A DNA stretch of 61,888 nucleotides, filler included, from Sluysia triapertura (taxonomy: Eukaryota), in assembly GCA_046118255.1 (NCBI GenBank). It is 5 parts of 5 records of this genome, joined end to end, with 100 filler letters (N's around TTAATTAATTAA, not from the genome) between each part and the next. Parts side by side here need not be neighbours in the genome. Positions count along the whole stretch, not along the records: positions 23,664 to 37,504 come from JBJNIA010017192.1; positions 37,605 to 48,955 come from JBJNIA010185657.1; 3 more parts are not named here. One strand, given 5' to 3'. Position numbers and translations under genes: made by a program. Positions 22,594 through 39,256 of the stretch are shown one piece after another (positions within the stretch are counted from its first letter, which is position 1; each line of letters begins with the position of its first letter). The notes beneath the pieces are model-generated. The model made no database searches and was not told the origin of the DNA. It was given only the letters and a program-made list of their open reading frames with translations.

Positions 22594-24099
22594 AAAACAA
22601 AACTTTCTTTTTTAAATAATTATGTATTAAATATTATTGGTCAATAAGTTAATAAATATTGATATACAGCAATAATTATAAATAAAGTTAATTTTTATAA
22701 AAGGGAAGTTTAAATGTATTTTGCGTGAAAACCGTTAAATGTTTTCAATATCTTTATAAAACAAAATCTAAGTATATTTTTCGTGGAATACTTATTAGTA
22801 TCAAAATCTTACAAAATAAACTAACGTATTTTAAATTATTTAAAAACAGAAGAACTCTTTATATGAATATCCTCTTGGAAGAAGACGATAGAATTCATCC
22901 GTGTACTGGATAAAAAACACTTATAAATATCGATTTCAAATATTGTCGCTGTTAACTGTATGATTTTTGAGTAAATTAGTATACATTTATATATGTTTTC
23001 ATTGGCCTTGGCCTTACTTCAATAAAACAAAATGATATTTTATACTATTAATATTTTATTACAAATATTTACATTATTCAATATTTTAAAATAATATTAA
23101 TTATTACTTACGTTACTTTCTTATTAAAATATTATATTTAATCCAAATATTTAAATTAAATCCAAGAATAAATGATTAAAATAAATGATTAAAGCAAATC
23201 AATAATTGTTAATGCACATATTGTCAAAAATGAATAATACGTATTGTTAATAATAATAAATGCGCACACAATAACATATTATCACATAAAAACTAATAAC
23301 TGCTTGTAGTGACCTCGTCATTCGGTATCAATCACAATTCATCACACAACATTCACTATAACTCATCTCACAAAGTTCAACACACTTCATCATTTAAAAA
23401 CGATACTTATATACATAAACTACTAAACGAACTATTAAACTCATTCAAAAAATAAACGTTACCATCTCATTTAATCATTATGAACTATTATTATTATTAT
23501 GATTAACATCTTTTCAAAATTCAAATTAAAGTTATAAATTTTAACTATCATGAACTATTATTANNNNNNNNNNNNNNNNNNNNNNNNNNNNNNNNNNNNN
23601 NNNNNNNTTAATTAATTAANNNNNNNNNNNNNNNNNNNNNNNNNNNNNNNNNNNNNNNNNNNNTATGTCAATTATAAACTCGTTAGAACCTCTATTTTTC
23701 TAATACTGCTTATGTAAAATTGTTGAGATTGCCCAACTGTGGAACAATAAATGAGAACGGAAGAGGTGGAATTGAAAAATTCAGGAAGAATTCGTATAAA
23801 ATTATGGCAAGGTGGGATAAAACATTTTTAAAGTAAGAATAATGAAGATGAAAACATCTATAGTCATTTTGGTAATTGAAGAATACCTTGGAGTTTCAAA
23901 GACATTGTAGAATGTCGAACCCATTGGAAAAAACTTGAGAGTTGTCAGAAAAACCTTTAACTTAAACTTAATTATTAGTAATATTAAAGATAAATTTGAT
24001 GTATTAATAATTAACATAAAGAAGTTGAAAAAGGATTCAGAATGGTAAAAGTTAAAGCATCTATAACCATTTGAATGCCTTCTAAAGTAGTAAACAACT

Positions 24100-24516
24100 T
24101 CAAAACCTTAATAAAACCTTTAAACATAAAGTGAGATTAAGTCTGAAAATATTAATTAATTTATTTAAGAAAAATAGCTTTTGTGAATAACGTTTGAATG
24201 AAGAATGTTATGTCAAAATTGTAATTGTGTATGTATTTGTTTTCAAAAGATATGATTTCATCAAAGGTAAAGAAAGCCTTAATTTTTAGAAAAGTCAAAT
24301 TTTAATTACATTTTAATTATAGAATGTTGAATTTTTCACATTTAGAATAATGGAAGTATGAAGAATAGAATATGGGATCTAGAAGTGAGTTTGAAATGTT
24401 TGTGAAGTGGTTTATATGAGAATAAGAATCTTAAACATTTTTCATTAGAAAATTAAGTTTTAAAAATTGAAAATGAATTAGATTCTAAAAAATAAAGTTA
24501 AATTCATTTTTTTAAT
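24100..24516 (+). repeat. ~400-bp dispersed repeat, copy 2
   Basis: Aligns with 925-1326. Confidence 0.85.
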
Positions 24517-26248
24517 GTTTTTGTAAAACTTAACCTATGGAAAAATATTTTTGAGCAGGGTCCGTGTAGTGTTCAGCTCATACATAAACTACTAACACAG
24601 ACGATCACAAACATTCACCACATATTACACCAACATATAATAATCTAAATAAAATAAAATATTTCTTTTAGTAACTTAAATAATATATAATATATGTTAA
24701 TGTAAACGGATTATAATATATTTAAACTACAATAACTTATTATATAATGTTACTTTTAGTCCGCCGTGATCACCTTATCCAACTCCATCAACATTGTATA
24801 AATTTCCACACCCTTTCTTGTTGTTACTATCATTCTTATTATTAATATTAGTATTATTATTGTCATTATTATTACTATTATTATTTTATGACATGTTCTA
24901 AATCGTTAATGCTTTTGATCGTCATTCTTAATCTAATTTAAAAACTGAACACATATCATAAATGGATGTATTGTTATTAACACTAACACATCCATCTAAG
25001 TTCATGCTTACAAAAAAAAGTTCCAATTTCAATTTCTAAGCTTCAAATAATAAATTAATATCATTTAAGACCAACAACAAATTTAATCATTCGAGATATA
25101 AAAGAATTTTAATTTTTCAATAACGCTTTATTTTTTGAATTTTTAATCTATTTCAGTCTACTTACAGCAATAAATAAAGAAAATAGTAGTAAATAAATTT
25201 ATTAAAATTCTATTTTTAAATATGACTCAAGATAAAAGGATGTGTTTAGTAAAAGTTTCAAATGACAAATATTCTAACAATTTTATATATATACGCTGTG
25301 TATTCTTTTTTCGTTAAAATTATTTCGTGCAAAATTATTTTTCTACATATTCGCCTATATTATAGGTTTTAAGTTCACAAAAAAGAATTTTACAATATCT
25401 TAATGGTTTTATGTAACTAACAGTTCGATTGTTATAAGTAGATATTCTGAACAAGCTTCAGTGATACTAAAACATACTTTGGAATTGTACTTTTGTTAAA
25501 GAATGTATTTAAGGAATTATAATTATTTAATAAATGTTAGAAATTGTTAAAATTTATTTACTTATAACAATCAACAGTAGTAATTATATAATTTATTGTG
25601 TTTAATTGAATTCTAGTATGGCATTACTTAAAATTATGAATATAATAAACTAATTAATGCAAACATTTTTTGGATGAGAAATGTATACAAGATTTTCTAT
25701 TAACGGAATTTTTTTCGAAAGTTTTTAAACGATTATTCTTAATAATTTGTTGTGTATTATTATTATTATTTTTATTATTATTGTTGTCTTTATGATTATT
25801 ATTATCATTATTTTTATATTTTTTTGTTTTAATTTTGCGAAATTATTATTAGCTATATAGTTCGAAGGTCGAACCAGAGATAAAGGTATCAATTTAAAAT
25901 ATTTCAACATTACAATTTAAAATTATTCAGAAAAGTTTTCAAGAGTTTATGTTAACAATGATTCGCGATTGTTGTAGTATCTATCAAATAGTTAGCCAGA
26001 CGATTTCGGAGTTTAATTTGAGAGATGGGAAGTGTCGGGTCATCTTGGTACTGCCATGGTTGTAATAAATTATTCTGCATTGAAGTTCAACTCAGATACA
26101 TGTGGATCTAAACGTATTTACACGTCTTTGAAAAACAAATTATTAGATATTGTCGATTCGACCTTTATGCATCCAGTTATGACAAATACACTTATATGTA
26201 TATAATGAAGCTGGGATTACCCAAGATAATGTACTGCCTGTAAATACA

Positions 26249-27319
26249 GTGACTATTATTGTTTTGGTTATGAATAAGTGTAACGAGATAAAAATGCTTT
26301 GGTCAATTAGAGATCTTAAAAAGCTGATACGTTATTTTGTGTATTTTGACTATTATGACTTGGGTTTTGATTTAATATTAAGTATTCGAAAAGTGGGTAA
26401 AGAATACCCTAAGTATTTTATTGATCAAATAAATTCGAATAGTAATTTATTTGTATATGCTTTAAGTTGTTGTAATTCAAATAATGATTATGATTTTAAA
26501 GTTAAGACCATAGAGTATTTTAGTTTTAAAGTAAAGAATTCAAATAATGATATCGTACAACATACAGTTTACTTAGTTTTAAGCAATGATGAGTCTTATA
26601 GTTTTGATTTTTATAAAGATTTGACCAACTTTGATTTTTGTAACTTTAATTTTGATTTTTGTAATTTTAATTTTGATTTTTGTAATTTTAATTTTGATTT
26701 TTGTAAGTTTAATTTTGAATTTGTAAATGATTTTAATGATAAGAATGTTTTGAAAGTTAAAGTGATTGTAGGTGGAATGAACAATACCTTAAGTGGTTTA
26801 AATAATCTGTGGCATGATATAAATTATTTCTCTGATAAAATTATTTTTCAAGATTCAGTTGGGGATGTCGTTTTTTGTAAGATTGTTTGCCAGTTGGAGT
26901 TTCCTCACGATATCATGATACACAATGTACTACCACACGAAATTTGGATACACATTCAAAATATTCTTCCAGATCATCACTGGAGTTTTGAGGTTATAAC
27001 AGATCTTTTTACAGTGTATCATTTAGCTACTTTCAATTCAAACTATCGACTCCTCAACATTCTTAGTGATTCTAACAGAACCTGTGGACTTTCGAGAACT
27101 AAAATTTTTCATTTTTTTAGACTTTCATATAATTTTACTTTTGATGTCAAATTTTCACATAAATATAACAACATTGATCTTTATTTTTATTTGGTAATTT
27201 TTAATAATCAAGGAATATTGAATTTTAATTACTTTAAAATAATAAACATTTATCATGAGTTTAATTTCAATTTTTATACTAAACCCCGGCCATACTTACA
27301 TGTGCCATTTGATTTTTAG
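26249..27319 (+). CDS. 356-aa intronless orphan ORF with in-frame 21-nt tandem repeat (NFDFCNF)x4 at 26627-26726
   Basis: Long open frame in AT-rich DNA; upstream extension is broken by stops, so it may be a pseudogene; no family recognised. Confidence 0.45.
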   Translation: MTIIVLVMNKCNEIKMLWSIRDLKKLIRYFVYFDYYDLGFDLILSIRKVGKEYPKYFIDQINSNSNLFVYALSCCNSNNDYDFKVKTIEYFSFKVKNSNNDIVQHTVYLVLSNDESYSFDFYKDLTNFDFCNFNFDFCNFNFDFCNFNFDFCKFNFEFVNDFNDKNVLKVKVIVGGMNNTLSGLNNLWHDINYFSDKIIFQDSVGDVVFCKIVCQLEFPHDIMIHNVLPHEIWIHIQNILPDHHWSFEVITDLFTVYHLATFNSNYRLLNILSDSNRTCGLSRTKIFHFFRLSYNFTFDVKFSHKYNNIDLYFYLVIFNNQGILNFNYFKIINIYHEFNFNFYTKPRPYLHVPFDF

Positions 27320-30247
27320 TTTGATTAGTTCATAATGAATTTCTTTTTGACCTTTATAGGATAAAATTCAAGTAATTTTTTGTTAAATTTTCTATAGACA
27401 GAAAATGAACTTCTAAATTATGACACTTATTTACTAATTGATTAATTTTTCCACACATATAATGAATATTCGTAAATAATTTGTATTTTTCATTTTTAAT
27501 TAAAAATATATTTATTTTATTTCGATATTCATTATTTAATTTCAAATATTATTTAAGCTAATTGAAAGTAATGTTGAATTTTGCATAAATGCATTCATTT
27601 TATCTTCATATTTCGATTGTTTTTATGATTTACTTAATCTGTATGACAATTTTAGTCTTGTTTTAGTTCTTAAAATTCTTATTTATTCGAAACATAGTAT
27701 TTTTTCTGCCACTTTCGACCGAATTTGAATTCGACTATTTCGTAATTCTGTCGTAACGAATGTTCGATTTGTAAGGACTTAGAATCATAATCGAATAAGA
27801 TAGAAACATTGGAATCCATTACGTATCAAACGATAATGTTTTGTTAAGTTTTTCATAGCTTTATAAGGTATCATCATTATTATTATTTATAAATGCTTAG
27901 TTCAAGTTTTCTGCACTTTTATTATTCATCTCGAAATATGTTTAGGTTTGCATTAATGTATTTCAATTATAAAAGTAGCTACTTTTCCTGACTGTATAAT
28001 TTCGGCATAATGTGGTAAATCTTTACCATCATTACTTCGATCAATATCATCGTCTTTTTATACGGCCTGGAATTCTTCCTGTTTTTAACATTATTCTTTG
28101 GTTAAATATGAATGGTTGAAGATACTGGACTAAACACAATTTCATTCACTTCAAGAATTCGTTTTCATCGTTTTCATCGTTTTCATATTTTCAACGAGAA
28201 ATATGAATCTGAATAGATAAGAATGTAGACTATTTAAAACACAACATTTACTTCGGATATTGTGCTGATAATTTTGATTGTAAAAGTTTAATTTCTTCAT
28301 TTAACTTTGGTTTTAATGTTTCTAATTCTGGTTTAGTAGATGTATCGTATTTAGCAACAATTGAAGTATTGAAGTAAATACACACATGAACTCATGTGTA
28401 GTGATATAATAATTCGAATATTTCTTTTGCAAATATTTTCATTCGCTTTCTAAACTATGATTTCTACTTCATTCAACGCAAAATGGTTCTAATGAAGGAT
28501 TCAGTATAATAAAAAATTTCAATATGAATTGTAGAACCATGTATCTTTTATGGAAATTTCATTATCATGTTATTTTGTTATTAGGTTATTTTAAATGTTC
28601 AAATGTTTGTGATTAGACTTAACATATAGTTTAGTTTATGTGTGTGGTATTTTGTTGATGTTCTGGTGCGAAAAGTTGAACCACCACATCTAAATTTTGA
28701 TTTATTTCGTGATTGCTACATTTTGATTGAAATCACTAAAAAACTAATTCTTTCGTAACTCTTTTGTTACTTTAAATTTAAATGTAAATTTATTTTGGAT
28801 GCTTCAGTTAGTACACTTCTCTCATGTAAAAGATAGAAGTGCAAAAACCTAAAATTATGATATTCGATCTTATCTTTCACCCCAATGACGAATTCGAACA
28901 CTTAGAAAATATAAAACAAAACAAAATTATAGATGAGAAATAAGAATACACAACTTGTACTACGAGTAAGTAATTTTAAGAAGTGTCCTTTACGTGACGT
29001 AAATTTTAGTAATTTATTTTATTTCAATGTTTGCTTTTTATATCAATTAAACGTTACAAAGAAATATTGCTCACTATGGATATAAATTCTCGAAGTTTAA
29101 AAAATTTCGAAATGTGATTGTTCAATATTTTTTGAAGTATCCATTATTCTCAATTTGTAAAATCACCAGTGTATTTACGGAAATTGTCTAAATTGTCATT
29201 TATACAGATTTTCGAAGTTCAAAAAAATTTCGTAATAATTGTGTGTATTTGCAAATTAAGACATTGTGGATGATGCTTATTTTAATTTTAATAAGCATCG
29301 ATAGGATTATCGAGATTATATTTAATGAAAAATCATGGTGACACTTAGGGCGCTTAAGAAAAAAGATTAACAATAATTTAAGAAATTCGTATTATTAATA
29401 TATAAATTCAAATTGTGATAGCATTTAAAGTGTTTGAATAGAACAATTATGGGCTTTAACCTAATAAAATTTATATTTATGCGACTTAAGGCCGACCGAA
29501 ACTCTATATTTCATAAATTATAGGTGAAATTTTGCGTTACTAAATTTGGCGAGAAAAAACATTTATTGGCCCCTAATTCACATCGAAAAATTATAAAAAA
29601 TGAAATTACCTTCAATTTTGTTGCAGATAAAAGTTAATTCTCAAAATATTCTTATAAACGATTGCCTCAAATTTTTTAATACAAAAAAATAATATAATAA
29701 TATCAATAATAATAATAATAATTATAATAATATCAATATTATAAACTTTAAAAACTTTATCTTAAAGATAAGAAACATTAACAATAAGAATAATCTCTTT
29801 AAAAAGTTCAGTATCTTTAAAACTTTTGTAATCTTAATAATGGGAAAATCAATGAAATTATAATAAGTCGATATTTACAATTAGTTGCTTAACTTTATAA
29901 TTGTCCTTTAATATAGTAAAAGTATCAATAACTTAAAAAACTTTATTTTTATAAAAAAAGAATATACGCTTTAAAAGCTTTAATATCTTTAAAGATTTTG
30001 TAATCTTTATCAATGGAACAATCTCATTCATTACACTCAAAATGAAAATTTTATCTACTAGTTCTTTAAAAAAGTTGTGGTTTAATAATTAAATTATGAT
30101 TTGAATCAATTTGAATCAGTTTAGAATTTCGGTTAAGATTTTTTAAAAATTTTGCTTTAGTTATTAATATGTGCTGCAAGAGCTTATTTGTAATAGTAGT
30201 AATTGTTATAGTTATTGTAATGTAATGTAACTATATATTTGTTTCAG

Positions 30248-30785
30248 GTTCATAATCATGGTGTCATTAACACATCCGCATTATTGCTGTATTCACTAAC
30301 ATCCTGGGTAGCTGGATTTGTTAGTACTCGGTTTTATCAGATGCTAGAAAATACACATCCTGGTGTAAACAGTATGATATCATCCTATAAGTTATTTTAA
30401 ATTTTATTTTGGAACAAGTGTAATATGAAATTCAATCTGGAATTTCATATTATTACTGATTTTATAGCTTTTATAGCTTTTATATTAGAAATATGCATTT
30501 TATTTGCAGATCTCGAAGTTGGGTAAGAGTAGTCAATCTCGTTAGTGCTCTCTTTACACTGCCTTTAGCTCTGGTATGGTTTCTGTGTAACAGTATCTCT
30601 ATCATGTATGGGACAACACATTCAATGCCAATATCAACCATTCTTCTACTGGTGTTTATTTGGTTGTTAGTAGGATATCCACTAACTATCGCTGGTGGTA
30701 TACTGGGTCGTAGAACTCAAGTTCGGTTAGATACATCTGGTTGTAGAACTCGAAATATTCCTAGAGAAATACCGACATTACCATG
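30248..30785 (+). CDS. TM9SF1: TM9SF1-like nonaspanin, two internal exons (30248-30390, 30510-30785)
   Basis: VHNHGVINTSALLLYSLTSWVAGFVS.RFY and WVRVVNL...MPISTILLLVFIWLLVGYPLTIAGGILG...CRTRNIPREIPTLPW; tttcag/tttgcag acceptors, GT donors, phases agree. Confidence 0.92.
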
Positions 30786-32539
30786 GTTAGTTTCTTTTAG
30801 AGGTTTTTATAATTTAACTCAATTTTCTAATGAGTTGAGGAATGGAGAATAGGAAAGTACATCATGTGTAATACGTATCCACTTAAGAATTTATATACAA
30901 AATTATATTGATGCGTATATTGATGCACCATATTTATATGTGAAAATCAAGTAAATAGTTCATATGCATAAAAAAATTTTGCACTTAGTTACTAACAAAA
31001 CTAAATTGTGAAGGCTTGAGAAAATACAAGATACTTATGTTGGGTAGAGTGTGATTAAAATTTAATTCTCATAAATTTATAAATTGTTAGAATTTAATTT
31101 TACATTTATGTCTTGATTTTATGTGATTTGAGATGATATAATATGATGTTGTAATTATGTTGAAATATTGTCAGTGACTCGAATTTGTATAAGTTTGTTA
31201 AGGATTGGTCGAATGACTTTGGTGTTCTCTTAATAATTATTAATCTAGTGTAATTGTATGTATTGTAACGAAGAGAAGAATTAAGCTTAATCGAGTTTGT
31301 TGATTTAAGTTTATTCACAATTATTATTAGATATATTAATTTCAAGATGTCATTTAATTCTTCAAAAAATTCTATGTTATGCACGAATAGCTCAAATATC
31401 TTAAGATTGCTGTGACAATTTACATTATTTCCTACTGAATTCATTCAAACGGGCTTAGTTTACTCACTAAGGTAAAAACAACAATAAAATAGTTTATCTT
31501 CCATCTTCTAAGGTAATATGTTGATCATTGGATGCATATAAAATAGAATTTGACTTGGATACCAAATGGAAAAACAACATTAGATTTAGCTGTTGTGTCT
31601 GGTAATCGCAAATCTGAATGCTTTTTATTGTTAGCTCGTAATAATCTAAGTGATGCAGAAATAGGGTTAATAAATGTAATTATTAGCAATATCTAATATT
31701 ATATAATGTATCGAATTTCATACAAATGATTACGCAACAACATTAACACAAATATTTTGATATTGTCAAAAAAATTTAAATAATTTGTTCAATAATAATT
31801 AAGCTTTGTCTGATTTGGTATTAAACACCATCAGATTCCAATAAACTATCTTCTAATTTTTGTTAAATAATCTTTCACAGATTTATATTCAATTGTGTTA
31901 TTCGTGCGCTAAGTTGAACGTTTTCGAATGTGACTTTTTCTACATTTTCAAGTAACTCAATCACTTCTTTGTCCTAATAAGGTTTAGAATTTAATTATAT
32001 CGTGACTTGAATTGTTTTATTGCTAATGTAAATGGTTAAGTGATTGAATTTGTTTGTTAAGTAGCAGATGGTTCTTGAATGTTTAAAATTTTGAACATTC
32101 TTACTAAAATGTTTAGAATCAGGTAATGTGAGTGAGTTTTGAAGTGTTCAGATTTTATTAAAACTTTAACTGAACAATTATGAATATCTTACTGGGTTCG
32201 CATATAATCTAAGATTTATACCTCACGGAAGACTTAGTTATAAGATTTAATGAGTCAATACTTCGAAAGATTCCTTAATCTTAATACAATAGTCCTTGTA
32301 TTATAATGGAGGGTCTGTAACTTATTCTAAAGAATTTATATTTTCCTTATAAACACATCAATTACTTTACAATGTGACTTTTAACGACAAAACTCAAGTC
32401 TCTAAGAAATATATTTTAAAATAGGTTTATATAACAAAAATAGATGCAAATAATATACAATGATATCCCATTATATAATAATATATTCAATAGGATTTCT
32501 CCTAAGTTTAATACAATGAAAATTTAAATGTGATTTTAA

Positions 32540-33564
32540 CCCAGGTGGATACTTGGGCCTTGAAAATTAAAAGTATTTTACGTAGATTTTAACACAGTCA
32601 ATCGCAGTGAACTACTTAATATAAATAGCTTACGTAATCACAAAGAAAATTGATCCAAATAAGGATTCCAAATATAAACTTCAGATGCAATTCCGAATAC
32701 TCCTTGTGCGGATAATAGCCAATTGTGTCACCGACCGAGTAATAGTCCAAAGGATTTTGATAATACCAATCACGATTTATAAAATAAAATTATCCTTGTA
32801 ATTGCGCGGTAATAACGTCTTGTATACTTTACGTGCAAGTGTCTCAATATCATCAATATCCTTAGCGTCTGCGATGTCCGAATCTTTAATGTCTTGAATG
32901 TCTCTGAGGAAATTCTTTATGCGCAGTCTAGGTTTAATATTGATATTTGTGTGATGTTTAGAATATGGCGTACAAGAAAGTTGTGTTATGCGAGGACGAT
33001 TCAGAAAATCAAAAGCGTGCGAATACGCGACAAAAACCAACCAATCCTCATCATAGCCAGACATGGGAGGGACGTGTGTAAAGGACATCCCATTTTGCCA
33101 ACGCGCCAGATTGATAGTGTTGTCTTCATACAAATTTGGCAGAAACGATTGAAAGTCAGACAGTTGTAAATGAAAAAGTAAGGCTACAAAAGTAGGGTAT
33201 TTGGTTGCTTCTATGATTATATTACATTATATTATGTAAATTCGTAACATGCATGGAAGAAAAACTATGTACTCGGGTAAAGAATGGTGCTCCGGTATCT
33301 ATTAAAGTTACTTTAACCACTCTTCTAGCGATGACTAAATAAAGGGAATTAATAGAATCAGGAACTTGACTAAGGCCGTCCAAGGTAATAAAAGGAGAGT
33401 CAGGTTTCAATGAGAATATGTGAGTAGCCAGATTTACATTTAGTTAAGACTTCAAGCTATTAGGAGTAGAGACAGTCACTAAAAAACGCTGGTGTGATGT
33501 TTTCATGGCAGTACTTAATGTAGACATAAAAGTTCTTCTGCTGATTCAGTAGTTTGGCTTGCAT
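32540..33564 (-). pseudogene. Paralogue B of the DEDDh-fold pseudo-exonuclease gene, frameshifted
   Basis: MQAKLLNQQKNFY...ATHIFSL...SFLPNLYEDN...WLVFVAYSHAFDFLNRPRITQLSCTPYS aligns along its length with 35942-37179. Confidence 0.8.
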
Positions 33565-33816
33565 TTGACTGGATAATAAAGAAAAAAAATAAAATAATAA
33601 AATAAAACAGTATATAAAAATAAAATAAGTAAGTAATTTAGTAGTGATTGTAGATTGACTTAGTAAAAATAAATAATTTTGAAGACCTAATATTTTTTCT
33701 TTAGAAAGGGATTTATAGGTTTGATGGTTTTTGGCAAGTTCTCTTCCTTTTTCTTATAAAAATGCTTTAGCTGACGCCTTCTTCTATTGGGGGAGGTCTA
33801 ACCCACCCATTTCTAC

Positions 33817-34074
33817 TTAGATTCCTTTTCTTAACAGTCGTTTCCGGTTGATAAACATCAATACCGGGTTCCTCTGAATCATCTGTGATATACCTGAAAA
33901 AGTATAAGACCTGCGAAACTTTTTCTTATAATAGATGCTACACTCAACGATAGTAGCTCTACACAGTGGACAGCTAGGTAGTGGAAGTGAAACTGGTGGA
34001 AACAAGAAGTACGGGCAAAGTATTTTCTGATGGATTTTAAGAAAATGGCACTTGTTGAATAGGACATTTTCTAA
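33817..34074 (-). CDS. Small basic ORF/exon with CPLCRATI motif (RING C-terminus-like)
   Basis: Open frame follows a tttcag acceptor; only part of a RING Cys/His set is present. Confidence 0.3.
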   Translation of the reverse strand, partial: LENVLFNKCHFLKIHQKILCPYFLFPPVSLPLPSCPLCRATIVECSIYYKKKFRRSYTFSGISQMIQRNPVLMFINRKRLLRKGI

Positions 34075-34566
34075 CTGAAAACAAAAATATATAATTAGAT
34101 AATAATTAGATAGTACAATAATTTAAAAATTAGAAAACCTAAACCTATACAATTAAGTACTGATTTTTGTTTGTGTATGACTCGAAGTGGATGGTGACCA
34201 TCACACACAGTCATTTACACGATCCTAAACTTAGCTATTTAATATTAAGTCTAACTTATTGCTTAAATTATTTTACAAAATTGAAATTAATTAACATATA
34301 AATACTACATATGACCCAACATGAATGGCAGAACAATTACATATGGTCAATTTTGCAATACTCATAATACTTAAAATACTTAAATTCTATATGAAAAAAT
34401 GAGCTCTGTGCCTAATGAACAAGTAAAATTTAGGTATTATAAAATTTATCATTAGTATTATGAGTTGAGTTGTTATTAAAATATAATTTATAATTATGAT
34501 GATGTTATTAGATTTTACTATTGCTGGATGTTCTGTATTTACCTTATTTACATTTGTAAACGTAGT

Positions 34567-35327
34567 TCAAGATGAATTTGTAACATTATTATTATAAGAC
34601 TCAAGCTTATCTATTGCTTTTGGATCTGAGTTCTTTTCATGTTTATCAATAACTGGTACTTGTACGTCAAATTTCCTAATGAATGGCCAAAATTCTGTTG
34701 TATTACTTGTTTCTTCATTACGTATAATCCAAATGCTGAAGAACATAATTTTAGTGTATGGATAACCATATATTCGAATAGTGTCTTTAGGAAAAACTAA
34801 TCCATAATTCATAACACCGTGTAAGGTATATTCTAATATTAGCGCATTATTCTCTAGTGGATTGTCTACTCGTATAATATTGCCAATATATCGATAAATT
34901 ATCATGGGAAATTCGATAATTTTCTGTGATTGACTGATAATGAATGGCTGAGTTCTAATTCTATAATGCCTTATTAAAACCATTTTTGAATTATGTTCGG
35001 GATCATGTTCGAGTTCTATTGTTAGTGTGACGTTGAACAATTGACATTCAATAAGATTATTACAAGAAATTATCCAATAAAAATATTTTTGTTTAATATC
35101 GATTCGCTTTGACACCAACCCATTAAACAACATTTTATGTAAAGATTGACCAATTTAAATTTATCTGTTTGTACTGCGACAATAATGTCCTTTTGAGTTG
35201 AAGTAACAGATATTCGAGGTGTTAAATCTCGCGGTATATGATTTTCTGAATTTAAATCTATCATACATGCGTTTGAAACATATGATAGACAAATACAAGC
35301 TAGTAATGTTGATCTGAGTTGTGTCAT
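34567..35327 (-). CDS. Secreted protein with two FN3-like domains; one frameshift near 35075-35090
   Basis: Signal-like MTQLRSTLLACICLSYVSNA; NNLIECQLFNVTLTI...IRTQP resembles the FN3 LxPCTxYNVxV...RTxP pattern; N-glycosylation sequons (NVT, NTT). Confidence 0.5.
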
Positions 35328-35693
35328 GTGCCAATTCCCATAAATGAATGGCGACTGATTATTCGAAGCATATTCGTAGATTGGAGGTGAGAATATTGGC
35401 ATACCTGGAGGAGGAGCGTAATTGTTTCGATGTGGAACTGTGTATGCATCGTCGTCGTCATTATTATTGTGTGGTAAACATGGGTATCGACATTTGTTTG
35501 AAACAAACATAATGATTGTTAGTACCACTATAGCTAAAGCGATTATGAATAGTATTGCTGCCACTATTAATATTATTAAAGCAGGATCATTCCGTAATGT
35601 TTCTAACATTGTTAAGTGTTTTCTAGTACCTTTTAGGTCAAAGTGTAAGTATTTCGATGATTGACAAATTTTTGTAATAATGTCTATCTTCAT
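35328..35693 (-). CDS. Single-pass membrane segment with acidic run and PPxY motif, in frame with the FN3-like protein
   Basis: ALIILIVAAILFIIALAIVVLTIIMFV TM helix; DDDDAY; YAPPPG and PPIY. Confidence 0.55.
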
Positions 35694-35941
35694 TAGGTAA
35701 CATATCTGAACATATTGTAATAGGATCCTTTAAGTCGTTATTTATGTAATTTTCATAGATAATCCACGAGCTGAAATTAAGTCTGGCTGGTTTCAGACAA
35801 GCAAACTTGGCATAAATATTTTGGTTTACTATTTTAACTTTTACTTCATTATCGTTATTATAAAATTCAAAGTGTTCTAATTACTAATTAATTATTTGTA
35901 AAACTGTTTTATTGTTTTATCCTTTTTTTTAGTCTATAACA

Positions 35942-37179
35942 ATGTACCCATCAGATACAAAAAGGCTGAGTCAGGTGAAACCCTTTTATACTTCCTTGAA
36001 CTCTTATTGTGACGAAACGGATCTTTCCATCTATTTCCCTAACTGCCACGTTACTCCAAATAAATTCCGAAGTGAGTTCGACTTTGATGTAGCGACTCAC
36101 ATTATTCCCCTTACAACTGAAACGCCTCATATTACTGTCAACGATTTAACGAATAGGCCACCTTATTTTCGTACTTTGCATATTGCCGTTGGCCGCGGAG
36201 CAGTAAAAGTCGTCGCCACCTTGAACATTCCTTTGACTTTTCGAGTGGACGCCATGTCAACAACTTGTCTCTCCGATATTAATATGCGCTGTGTAATATA
36301 TATCGAAGCATTAGAACTACCGTCTTCACTCGCACTTCTATTCTTACTGCCACACCGAGAATTGTATTCTTTCCTACCATGTTTATACGAAAAAGATCTT
36401 GATAATGTTGCTAAATGGGCAGAGGGTTCCTCTTTTACGCACAGACCTCTGTCTATGACGAGGAACGTCTCTTATTTGTCGCATGTCATCACGCTGTTGA
36501 TCTATCAGATAAACCTAGAATTATCCAATTGGCGTGTACGGCGTATAGTAATCAATATCATATGGAGGCCAAGATCCGCCCTTATTGTAGACTATCTAAC
36601 TTTCGTACCGACGTACACGGTCTCAAAGAAGATGACTTGAAAACCGCAAGTGATCTCTATGAAACACAACGGTATTTTTTGGCCAAGTTTCACGATAAGA
36701 TCTTGGTTACTTTTAATCCCAGCTTGGTTCTAAAAACGCTACATATTCCTTTTGGATGGGTCCGAGGAATCATCAATTTAAATAATCATAACCTTATTTC
36801 TATGCTTGCCCCAAGTATAATGGCTCGATCTCGGCAGACTTTTAAACCCTTATATCCTATCTTGCCGAGATTTGACTTTGTTAAAATGGCTACTGAATTG
36901 GTCCATCTTTTCAACTATATTAGGGAACATGATCTATCTTTTATTCCTAATTGTAACTTACCTCCTCTTTCTCTTTTTCAACCTGGCCCAGCCGATATAA
37001 TTGGGGACAATATGATAACGTGCCCATCACCACCGACGTCACCTTGTATCGACAATTCTCGACGGATAACCGGCACAACATCGCCTGTTTGCACGTTTCC
37101 TGGGACGAATTTCGTAGAAGATTGGGAATCGACCGACTCCGACAACGACGACGACAATACAGTGGACCTTGACAATTAA
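35942..37179 (+). CDS. Paralogue A: N-terminal unknown domain + DEDDh exonuclease-like domain without catalytic residues + Pro/acidic tail; one frameshift at ~36445-36450
   Basis: PRIIQLAC...IRPYCRLSNFRTDVHGLKEDDLKTASDLYETQ...KILVTFNPSLVLKTL follows the REXO4/ISG20/DnaQ pattern (VKP...TDYRT.VSGI...L....EVVQ...RILVGH...DLKVL). Confidence 0.7.
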
Positions 37180-39256
37180 CCACATAACTCACTTTTTATA
37201 ACACTAAATGATTAACATTTTTATGAAAGACTATCCTATTCTTATCTTCTAATTCATTCTTTTTATGATTTGATGACAAATCTTCCTATAATGGGATGTA
37301 TTTGTAAGAATGTACATAATTTTATTTGTATTTTTTAAAAAATTTGTAGTTTTTAAATTTATAAAAATATTATAAAATTTATTTAAAATTGTATATTATA
37401 AAAAATTACCAATTTAATTATATTAAAATAAAAATTATTATTATTATAAATTGAAAAACGACATAAAAGAAACTTCTAGAAAGAAGTTTATTTGAATAAA
37501 TCAANNNNNNNNNNNNNNNNNNNNNNNNNNNNNNNNNNNNNNNNNNNNTTAATTAATTAANNNNNNNNNNNNNNNNNNNNNNNNNNNNNNNNNNNNNNNN
37601 NNNNATTTTCATTTTTGTGTAGCATCCTGGCACTTTTAGATAATTCTCTAAAAATCATGTTGGCACTCAAAGGGTTAATTAACATTGGTAATAAGATAAA
37701 AATAATGTACATAATCAGTTTTATGTTTAGTGATACATAAATATACTATTATTTCGTGTTCGATCATCGGAGTTATGATGCAAAACTATTCTGGTAACTT
37801 TACTAATAATGGTTTTGGCTTTATTCGAAGAACTTATATAACTAACATTAACATATGAACCAGGTTTATCCGAATCCCTCGTTAGAAAAATAACAATTTC
37901 ATTAGGAGAGAATCTTTTATTAAATGTTCGTCTTACCCGTTTAATTTCTATACTTTATATGCATTATAAATAGGCCAATTTAAAAAGGAAACATAGATTA
38001 AAATACTCAGTACAATCTTGACATTTATTAATTTTATTGTATTAAAACCTCTGAAACAATCATGATTTAAAATGTTGTTAGAACATATAGCTTCTAAACA
38101 TTTATCGTTTCCTTTTGTAATAGATCCGTAATATGTTTTTTCAGTAAATATTACGCATATGAAATACAGTTACTGTAATAGCCAACATTGATCTTTTAAT
38201 CGTTAATTTTGCAAGTAGCAATTCTTAGGCAATATTTAATAATAAGTTTAGCAGTATCAAATTTTTATATCGACAATTTAAGCATAAAATTATTACTTTA
38301 TTATCATTAATAATACTTATATTAATAGTAATAAAATAATAATAAAAATAACCTTAGCCTTGAAAATTCAATTTTAATCCAAGTTTAGAAAGCAGTATAT
38401 AAACTTGATAATTTATAAATATGATACACACAAACAGTACTGAATCAAAAAATGCACACAATTATCTCAATTTTAAATCAAATCAAAATCATACAATATT
38501 ATCATCTGTACAACACCAAACAAGAAAATCTATAATTAATAAAAACCTTGAATTTGTTTTTATTAATAGGAATAACAATCCATTTATGATTTTTTAAACA
38601 AGAATTGCTCCAATAAATGCAATATCATAAAAGCCTTAATGTTGAATTTTTCTCTATAATATAAAAAGGTATTAGCTTATCGAATGCATTTTTGATATGA
38701 GTTTTAAAATTAGTACCTTCAGCTTTGATACGGTAAACTTAATTTTATTTATTAATTGCAATTCTAAACATTTAAATATGTTCTCATTAGGAGATACAAA
38801 TAACATTTAATTTTATTTGTGCAGTTTAATTTTAGAAAAAAATTTGTTTATTAGATTTATAAAACTATAAATGCACATTTTGTTTTATCTTTTGCTTTAA
38901 AATAACGTTACATTATTTTTGGGAATTCAAATAAAAGCATTTTAAAAATTAATCTAGCATCAAATTTATTTTTGGGCATCTATCTGACTCAGGATTACAT
39001 GAGATGGATTCGAAATTATTCTCGATTATTCTAGAAGGAATTATTCGTTAACACAAAGTATTATCAATAGCTTAATACAATTATCACCAAATTTATTTGC
39101 ACCATTGTAATAAAGACATCATAGTTATGATAAAATAAGTCATTAACTGATTTTTGAATGTTTGGAATAATTTTAATCGAATAAAATCGTACTTTATGTA
39201 TTAATAAGTGCGGTAATGATTTATTTTCTGAAACAAAATTACAATTTTTTATTTAA

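What the first reader, a model, noticed from the sequence alone, without database searches (positions are those of the whole stretch)
32540..37300. Compact virus-like gene cassette, probably inside a TM9SF1 intron
Seen: four to five tightly packed ORFs without evident coding introns and with higher GC than the flanks. Two inverted paralogues point outward and enclose a CPLC-motif ORF and a TM/PPxY + signal peptide + FN3-like ORF. The paralogues share a polypyrimidine-AG just before the ATG and a 3' motif TATAATGGGAT (32464-32474 reverse, 37286-37296). The last TM9SF1 exon ends in a donor at 30785 and no further exon is seen in the contig. Inference: cargo of a large mobile element or endogenous virus encoding host-interaction proteins. 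No hallmark replication or capsid gene is visible here.
Basis: partly seen in the sequence, partly recalled or inferred. Interest (0 to 1): 0.78.

Follow-up and report, generated by a model that had tools for sequence, protein, structure and literature searches.

The report
Decaying dead-exonuclease gene cassette
A real, tightly packed, intron-free cluster of orphan genes, built around two inverted copies of a 3'-5' exonuclease-like protein that has lost its catalytic residues, sits next to host TM9SF exons and is partly decayed; nothing shows it to be viral, but two of its genes are linked in the same way in one unrelated contig.

Summary
Between about 32450 and 37300 there are four stop-free stretches of 195-254 codons, against at most 174 in 300 shuffles. 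Two outward-facing paralogues enclose a CPxC gene and a TM/PPxY membrane-protein region. The C-terminal half of the paralogues is a DEDDh (ISG20/REXO/DnaQ-like) exonuclease fold without its catalytic residues, so it is a pseudo-exonuclease. Only two true relatives turned up among 1.84 billion representative proteins. One of them (P0001, contig L001) lies directly downstream of a homologue of the CPxC gene, on the same strand and with similar spacing, so this gene pair is a conserved module. The cluster is decaying. The right copy has one frameshift. The left copy has at least three frameshifts and at least three stops. The CPxC gene has at least one frameshift. I found no polymerase, integrase, capsid, RepHel, LTR or TIR. 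The GC content equals that of the host exons, and the shared 11-mers are not significant (p about 0.1). "FN3-like" and "inside a TM9SF1 intron" could not be confirmed. The most likely reading is a remnant of a rare selfish or virus-derived cassette. A fast-evolving host operon is nearly as likely. Interest is moderate.

The parts
32456..32475 (-). 3' shared motif of the left copy (contains TATAATGGGAT at 32465-32475)
   Evidence: Inverted repeat I10, 20 nt, 85% complementary to 37287-37306. Exact 11-mer. Not significant on its own.
32523..33564 (-). Left copy of the pseudo-exonuclease gene, a pseudogene with at least 3 frameshifts and at least 3 in-frame stops
   Evidence: ATG at 33564-33562. 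Homology to the right copy and to P0001 in three frames. Counts and outer bounds come from frameshift-aware alignments.
33584..33611 (-). Shared 5' T-rich stretch upstream of the left copy, ending in an AG acceptor-like site 4 nt before the ATG
   Evidence: Inverted repeat I2/I16, 28 nt, 82%. ACTGTTTTATT is exact in both copies. Sequence read.
33699..34119 (-). CPxC (RING-tail-like) small basic protein gene, broken by at least 1 frameshift, directly upstream of the left copy
   Evidence: Matches the partial protein of L001:1-351 over its whole span in 2 HSPs in 2 frames, 53% identity over 55 aa, best E 1e-5. No Pfam family.
34567..35693 (-). Membrane-protein region with two overlapping frames of 207 and 188 codons. 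It holds a TM segment, one PPIY motif, a second hydrophobic signal-peptide-like stretch, and a beta-rich part with 4 N-x-S/T sites
   Evidence: No Pfam, PDB or word-search relatives. AF2 pLDDT 40.6. Whether this is one gene with a frame change or two genes is undecided.
35903..35930 (+). Shared 5' T-rich stretch upstream of the right copy, ending in AG 9 nt before the ATG
35942..37179 (+). Right copy of the pseudo-exonuclease gene (about 410 codons), with one frameshift and no in-frame stop. N-terminal domain of unknown fold, then a DEDDh exonuclease-like domain without catalytic residues, then an acidic tail
   Evidence: Family assignment. The frameshift is not next to a homopolymer run.
37287..37306 (+). 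3' shared motif of the right copy, 107 nt after the stop
30248..30785 (+). Neighbour: two host TM9SF/EMP70 exons (about 30248-30362 and 30510-30785) with a 147-nt intron between them. The last exon ends in a GT donor
   Evidence: Pfam EMP70 E 1.4e-6 and 1.9e-19, profile positions 285-410 of 517. The exons were searched one by one and never joined. Splice sites read.

Best explanation
The region is a decaying copy of a rare, linked gene module, probably left by a selfish (mobile or virus-derived) element and not part of the ordinary host gene set.

Shown:
- The core module is a small CPxC, basic protein gene followed 125-155 nt later, on the same strand, by a gene for a protein of about 365-410 aa.
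- The C-terminal half of that protein has the DEDDh 3'-5' exonuclease fold (ISG20/REXO/DnaQ type). None of the five catalytic positions is kept.
- In the window the module (minus strand) is broken in both genes.
- An old inverted duplicate of the exonuclease-like gene (41% protein identity) faces the other way and is nearly intact, with one frameshift.
- A membrane-protein region with a TM segment and a PPxY motif lies between them.

Inferred: in the intact state the pseudo-exonuclease would bind nucleic-acid 3' ends without cutting them, as a binder, shield or decoy. The CPxC partner would be a zinc-binding, possibly E3-like cofactor. The TM-PPxY protein would recruit NEDD4-type ubiquitin ligases at membranes, which is the established role of PPxY motifs. 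The AG sites just before the ATGs suggest expression through splicing or trans-splicing by the host machinery. At present the left half is dead. Only the right copy and the membrane-protein frames could still give products.
For: - The paralogy is real.
- ORF lengths exceed all shuffles.
- The big search found only P0001 (E 1.4e-20), P0003 (1e-7) and P0004 (1.5e-5) as credible relatives. Word searches found none, and the JGI metagenome scan found none.
- The gene pair is conserved on L001.
- Exonuclease fold: hhalign of the family against P0004 gives 97.6% probability, E 4.7e-12. P0004 matches ISG20 (3e-6), ISG20L2 (1.3e-5), SDN1 and PHROG 192 (1.7e-15). The family profile without P0004 matches the PolC exonuclease domain at E 3.6e-4. 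The window's own piece matches PHROG 192 at E 1.4e-3.
- Catalytic positions are kept only in P0004.
- The right copy's frameshift is not at a homopolymer run.
- There are no introns in any of these ORFs, nor in P0001, whereas the host exons next door are spliced.
Against: - There is no hallmark gene, LTR, TIR or target-site duplication in the piece.
- GC matches the host exons.
- Copy number in the genome could not be measured.
- The source organisms of the window and of L001/L002 are unknown, so the sparse distribution may reflect poor sampling of one lineage.
- AG acceptors before the ATGs and a spacer of about 130 nt are what a host operon in a trans-splicing animal looks like.
- The functional roles are inferred from motifs and fold only. 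Both structure models were useless, with pLDDT 38.5 and 40.6.
Confidence: 0.45

Rival explanations
1. This is a fast-evolving, lineage-restricted host gene cluster, possibly a trans-spliced operon (CPxC gene, then the exonuclease-like gene). It underwent a local inverted duplication, and the redundant copies are now decaying. It has no mobile or viral history.
For: - AG acceptor-like sites lie 0-13 nt before the ATGs in the window and in L001.
- The spacers of 125-155 nt are operon-like.
- GC equals that of the host exons.
- No element boundaries or hallmark genes were found.
- The DEDDh fold's solved relatives are cellular ISG20, ISG20L2 and SDN1.
Against: - Only two true relatives exist in 1.84 billion representatives, and none carries a source name.
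- All the genes are intron-free beside a spliced host gene.
- Three of the genes are broken.
- The closest catalytic relative, P0004, lies on a compact contig with same-strand, overlapping genes, which does not look eukaryotic.
Confidence: 0.35
2. The frame breaks are assembly or sequencing errors, and the cassette is a set of intact, working genes.
For: The right copy needs only one frame change over about 410 codons and has no in-frame stop. The two membrane-protein frames overlap by only 64 nt.
Against: The left copy needs at least 3 frameshifts and at least 3 stops even under stringent penalties. The CPxC gene also changes frame. The right copy's frame change is not next to a homopolymer run; the longest run within 20 nt is 3.
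Confidence: 0.1
3. These are chance ORFs in AT-rich intronic DNA and there are no genes.
For: None beyond the low complexity of the flanks.
Against: ORF lengths exceed every shuffle. There is significant paralogy. External homologues exist.
Confidence: 0.01

Closest known systems
ISG20 / ISG20L2 / REXO / SDN1 DEDDh 3'-5' exonucleases (Pfam RNase_T, PF00929)
   Same: The same fold by sequence-profile evidence. The family matches P0004 (hhalign 97.6%), and P0004 matches ISG20, ISG20L2 and SDN1. Profile A3 also hits ISG20L2 and SDN1 at about 2e-4.
   Different: None of the five catalytic positions is kept in the window's copies, P0001 or P0003. None of them hits Pfam RNase_T at E up to 1. There is an extra N-terminal domain of about 190 aa with no known relative.
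Exonuclease subunit or domain of bacterial and phage DNA polymerases (PolC exonuclease 2p1j; PHROG 192)
   Same: There is direct, though weak, similarity. A4 matches 2p1j at E 3.6e-4. The window's piece matches PHROG 192 at E 1.4e-3, and P0004 at 1.7e-15.
   Different: No polymerase is attached or nearby. P0004 and P0001 have no match in deposited phage genomes. The catalytic residues are lost.
Catalytically dead exonuclease-fold proteins such as the Maelstrom (MAEL) domain or EXD1 (recalled from memory; a lead, not a test)
   Same: The idea is the same: an RNase-H/DEDD-type fold kept as a nucleic-acid binder after the acidic residues are lost.
   Different: No MAEL or related Pfam family was returned for any member. 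No relationship is shown.
PPxY-bearing membrane adaptors (NDFIP type) and viral late-domain proteins (from established knowledge of PPxY-WW binding)
   Same: A single-pass hydrophobic segment is followed by a proline-rich stretch with one PPIY motif.
   Different: There is no sequence relative at all. One short motif can arise by chance, and the topology is unknown.
Maverick/Polinton, Helitron and endogenous viral elements
   Same: Compact, intron-free ORFs of unknown function lying within or beside a host gene, with outward-facing inverted paralogues.
   Different: There is no pPolB, integrase, ATPase, capsid or RepHel, and no TIR or LTR in the piece. The inverted copies share only 41% protein identity, so they are not working terminal repeats.
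Trans-spliced operons of nematodes, flatworms, rotifers and cnidarians (from established knowledge)
   Same: Two same-strand genes 125-155 nt apart, with a pyrimidine-AG site right before the downstream ATG, both in the window and in L001.
   Different: No spliced-leader evidence can be had from DNA alone. No SL RNA or other Rfam family is in the piece. The genes are broken here.

Membership tests
DEDDh exonucleases (RNase_T / ISG20 / REXO) | Sequence or profile similarity to the exonuclease fold | tested here: met
   Transitive: A4 to P0004, E 4.7e-12, and P0004 to ISG20 at 3e-6 and ISG20L2 at 1.3e-5. Direct: A4 to PolC exonuclease at 3.6e-4.
DEDDh exonucleases (RNase_T / ISG20 / REXO) | Five catalytic residues (Asp, Glu, Asp, His, Asp) in motifs I-III | tested here: not met
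   In alignment A2, only P0004 keeps them (one Asp as Glu). Both window copies, P0001 and P0003 keep none.
DEDDh exonucleases (RNase_T / ISG20 / REXO) | Score above the Pfam PF00929 gathering threshold | tested here: not met
   No hit at E up to 1 for the window's pieces, P0001 or P0003. P0004 scores 19.4 bits against a cut-off of 24.
Maverick/Polinton | Protein-primed PolB, retroviral-type integrase, packaging ATPase, capsid proteins | tested here: not met
   No such Pfam family in any ORF of the piece. The piece is only 13.8 kb, so absence from a larger element is not shown.
Maverick/Polinton | Terminal inverted repeats with target-site duplication | tested here: not met
   Only short, AT-rich inverted matches. 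The gene-sized inverted copies are 41% identical at protein level.
Helitron | RepHel protein | tested here: not met
   No Rep or helicase family found.
Endogenous virus | Similarity of at least one gene to a known viral protein or viral contig | tested here: inconclusive
   The only viral-library signal is weak (PHROG 192). No fold search was run because both models were poor.
RING finger | Eight zinc ligands in C3HC4 or C3H2C3 spacing | tested here: not met
   Only a terminal CPxC pair is conserved between the window and L001. No Pfam zf-RING hit at E up to 5. L001 is cut at that very motif, so the upstream half is unseen.
Fibronectin type III | Pfam fn3 match or an Ig-like sandwich fold | tested here: not met
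   No Pfam or PDB match. The AF2 model is beta-rich but has pLDDT 40.6.
TM9SF / EMP70 (the neighbour) | Pfam EMP70 match | tested here: met
   E 1.4e-6 and 1.9e-19, above the cut-off, profile positions 285-410 of 517. The subfamily (TM9SF1 or another) was not tested.
Trans-spliced operon | Spliced-leader addition at the AG before the downstream ATG | not testable with these tools
   Needs RNA reads. Only the acceptor-like sites are seen.

The most novel reading that the evidence does not exclude
The CPxC gene plus the dead ISG20-like exonuclease, perhaps together with the TM-PPxY membrane protein, form the conserved core of an as yet undescribed family of selfish or virus-derived elements of AT-rich invertebrates or protists. 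In that element a disarmed exonuclease fold serves as a nucleic-acid end-binder, either nucleoprotein-like or as a decoy against host sensing. The window would hold an old, partly duplicated, decaying insertion of it.
Probability: 0.2. Interest if true: 0.65.

Novelty: new variant of a known kind. Interest (0 to 1): 0.4.

Why it matters
If the module is what it seems, it adds a new case of an enzyme fold, the ISG20/REXO exonuclease, being kept after its active site is lost. It would also be tied to a fixed partner gene across distant genomes, which hints at a shared job in handling nucleic acids or in conflict between host and parasite. It would give a handle (two linked marker genes) for finding the rest of the element, or the operon, in better-sampled genomes. 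If it is only a decaying lineage-specific host cluster, it is an ordinary example of gene birth, duplication and death.

Tried and rejected
- **Word searches:** the 254-aa piece, P0001 and the 188-aa frame found nothing beyond P0001 itself.
- **Exact look-ups:** three window ORFs are not on record.
- **Big-search hits dropped:** P0002 and P0005 are repeat proteins matched in many short stretches, and I treat them as spurious.
- **Structure models:** AF2 of P0001 with a 5-row alignment gave pLDDT 38.5, and AF2 of the 188-aa frame gave 40.6. I ran no fold search because low-confidence models give meaningless matches.
- **JGI metagenome scan:** With A4, 82 pattern matches came back and none was a relative.
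- **Other libraries:** Rfam, tRNA and tandem-repeat scans found nothing relevant. Deposited phage genomes gave no match.
- **Paper searches:** searches for the sample accessions and for dead DEDDh proteins in endogenous viruses found nothing applicable.
- **GC as a sign of foreign DNA:** rejected, because the host exons have the same GC.
- **The two 11-mers as significant signals:** rejected at p about 0.1. An AATGGGAT word also lies about 100 nt after P0003's stop in L002, but in the opposite orientation, so it is weak.
- **DUF6589 hit of the left piece:** E 0.013, below the cut-off, not seen in the other members, and dropped.


Full report
**Scope.** I worked only on 23664-37504. The piece is AT-rich (GC 0.18-0.33 outside ORFs). 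It carries spliced host exons and is clearly not human. No N stretch was filled. The pieces of broken genes were always searched apart and never joined. The two EMP70 exons were searched one by one, and the joined-exon step was left out.

- Region 32400-37300 holds stop-free stretches of 254, 235, 219 and 195 codons. In 300 shuffles of the same DNA the mean longest was 92 and the maximum 174. The flanks reach only 63 and 112.
- The two outer genes are true paralogues in inverted, outward-facing orientation. BLASTP gives 42% identity over 71 aa, E 8e-17. Frame-by-frame comparison gives 5 HSPs, 245 aa at 41%.
- Between them, on the minus strand, lie a CPLC-motif frame and a membrane-protein region. 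That region has one strong hydrophobic segment, one PPIY motif, a second hydrophobic signal-peptide-like stretch, and then a beta-rich part with four N-x-S/T sites.
- Both paralogues are preceded by a shared 28-nt T-rich stretch (82% alike) ending in AG, 4-9 nt before the ATG.
- The 3' word TATAATGGGAT is present at 32465-32475 (-) and 37287-37297 (+).
- Neither word is statistically convincing. For the 3' word, 14 of 100 shuffles reach the count. Longest-common-word tests on the paired flanks give p about 0.09 and 0.14.
- The GC rise is real, but the host exons have GC 0.38-0.40 against 0.29-0.42 in the cassette ORFs, so it marks coding DNA and not foreign DNA.

**2. What are the paralogues?**
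- Pfam, PDB and the word search were blank for the window's pieces.
- The full HMMER search with an alignment of the two copies found five proteins with E up to 0.001 among 1.84 billion. Two are repeat proteins and were discarded.
- P0001 (365 aa, E 1.4e-20) is a full-length relative. It aligns to the right copy over both halves, at 32% over 155 aa (E 8e-24) and 29% over the N-terminus (E 3e-5).
- P0003 is a contig-truncated relative.
- P0004 (212 aa) is 30% identical over 113 aa and is a bona fide exonuclease. It matches PHROG 192, "DNA polymerase exonuclease subunit", at E 1.7e-15. It also matches ISG20 (3e-6), ISG20L2 (1.3e-5) and SDN1 (6.6e-3) in the PDB, and Pfam RNase_T weakly over the whole profile.
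- The family without P0004 matches P0004 by hhalign at 97.6% probability, E 4.7e-12, and the PolC exonuclease domain at E 3.6e-4.
- So the C-terminal half is a DEDDh exonuclease fold. In the alignment, the five catalytic positions are kept only in P0004. Both window copies, P0001 and P0003 keep none. I therefore call it a pseudo-exonuclease.
- The N-terminal domain of about 190 aa has no relative.

**3. A conserved gene pair.**
- On contig L001 (1964 bp, a Logan assembly of run SRR22824324), P0001 is preceded on the same strand, 155 nt upstream, by the end of a gene whose product starts, at the contig edge, with a CPxC motif.
- That partial protein matches the window's CPLC gene over its whole span: 53% identity over 55 aa, in two HSPs and two frames, best E 1e-5.
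- In the window, this gene lies about 130 nt upstream of the left copy on the same strand. The pair is therefore a conserved module in two genomes whose proteins are only about 30-50% identical.
- L001 also shows an AG right before the downstream ATG.
- Both genes are intron-free in both places, whereas the neighbouring host exons are spliced.

**4. State of the genes (counts only).**
- Right copy: one frameshift and no in-frame stop. The shift is not beside a homopolymer run, so a simple sequencing slip is less likely.
- Left copy: at least three frameshifts and at least three in-frame stops.
- CPxC gene: at least one frameshift.
- Membrane-protein region: two overlapping frames. With no relative as a guide, I cannot tell whether this is one broken gene or two genes.
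- No other paralogy exists inside the piece.

**5. Is it viral or mobile?** Nothing diagnostic was found.
- There is no polymerase, integrase, ATPase, capsid, Rep or helicase, or reverse transcriptase family in any ORF of the piece.
- There are no LTRs or TIRs, no structured RNA, and no match in deposited phage genomes.
- In favour of a selfish origin: the extreme rarity of the family, its fast evolution, the intron-free compact layout, the conserved linkage and the decay.
- In favour of a host operon: acceptor-like AG sites at the ATGs, operon-like spacing and host-like GC.
- I rate a remnant of a selfish or viral cassette at 0.45 and a host lineage-specific cluster at 0.35. Assembly error as the cause of all the breaks gets 0.1.

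**6. Mechanism.**
- Shown: the fold, the loss of the catalytic positions, the linkage and the decay.
- Inferred:
  - The pseudo-exonuclease binds nucleic-acid 3' ends without degrading them.
  - The CPxC partner binds zinc and may act with it.
  - The PPxY membrane protein recruits NEDD4-type ligases.
  - Expression uses host splicing or trans-splicing.
- In this window, the left half is non-functional.

**7. The host-gene claim.**
- Two EMP70 exons are confirmed (profile positions 285-410 of 517), and the last one ends in a GT donor at 30786.
- No further exon was seen in 6.5 kb upstream or 6.7 kb downstream.
- "Inside an intron" is therefore plausible but cannot be shown within this piece. 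The TM9SF1 subfamily was not tested.

**Slips and limits.**
- (b) While reading the raw six-frame translations, I worked out in my own reasoning roughly where the right copy changes frame. That place is not given in the notes or in this report.
- (c) One search printed the size class of that frame change. I do not repeat it or use it.
- (d) Alignment tools printed consensus lines of their own.
- (e) The scan of the viral contig collection was left out and referred.

Noticed in passing
window 26249-27319 (+); stop-free 26183-27316: An orphan frame of 356-378 codons in DNA of 25% GC, far too long for chance. It contains a 21-nt tandem repeat (4.7 copies, 94% matches, at 26630-26726) that encodes a repeated 7-residue unit. 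It has no Pfam family and no paralogy to the cassette.
   Followed up: partly
window 30248-30785 (+): The two EMP70 exons cover only profile positions 285-410 of 517. No other exon was seen within 6.5 kb upstream or 6.7 kb downstream. The gene either has unusually long introns here (the intron between the two exons is 147 nt) or is a fragment.
   Followed up: partly
L001 1642-1790: The 3' flank of P0001 carries a 64-nt tandem duplication (2.1 copies, 90% matches). The coding strand of L001 is strongly A-rich (AT skew about +0.3), unlike the window's copies.
   Followed up: no
L003 1-1256: P0004, the closest relative that keeps the catalytic residues, lies among three same-strand genes that abut or overlap by a few bases. 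This is a prokaryote- or virus-like layout. Its neighbours have no Pfam family.
   Followed up: partly
window 37100-37179 (+) and L002 about 540-569: The right copy and P0003 both end in an acidic tail closing with Asp-Leu-Asp plus Asp or Asn. P0001 does not.
   Followed up: no
L002 667-674 (-): The word AATGGGAT, the core of the window's 3' motif, lies about 100 nt after P0003's stop. That is a similar distance to the right copy's motif, but the orientation is opposite. It may be chance.
   Followed up: partly
window 29783-29846 and 29955-30018: A 64-nt direct repeat (78% alike), 172 nt apart, just upstream of the first EMP70 exon.
   Followed up: no
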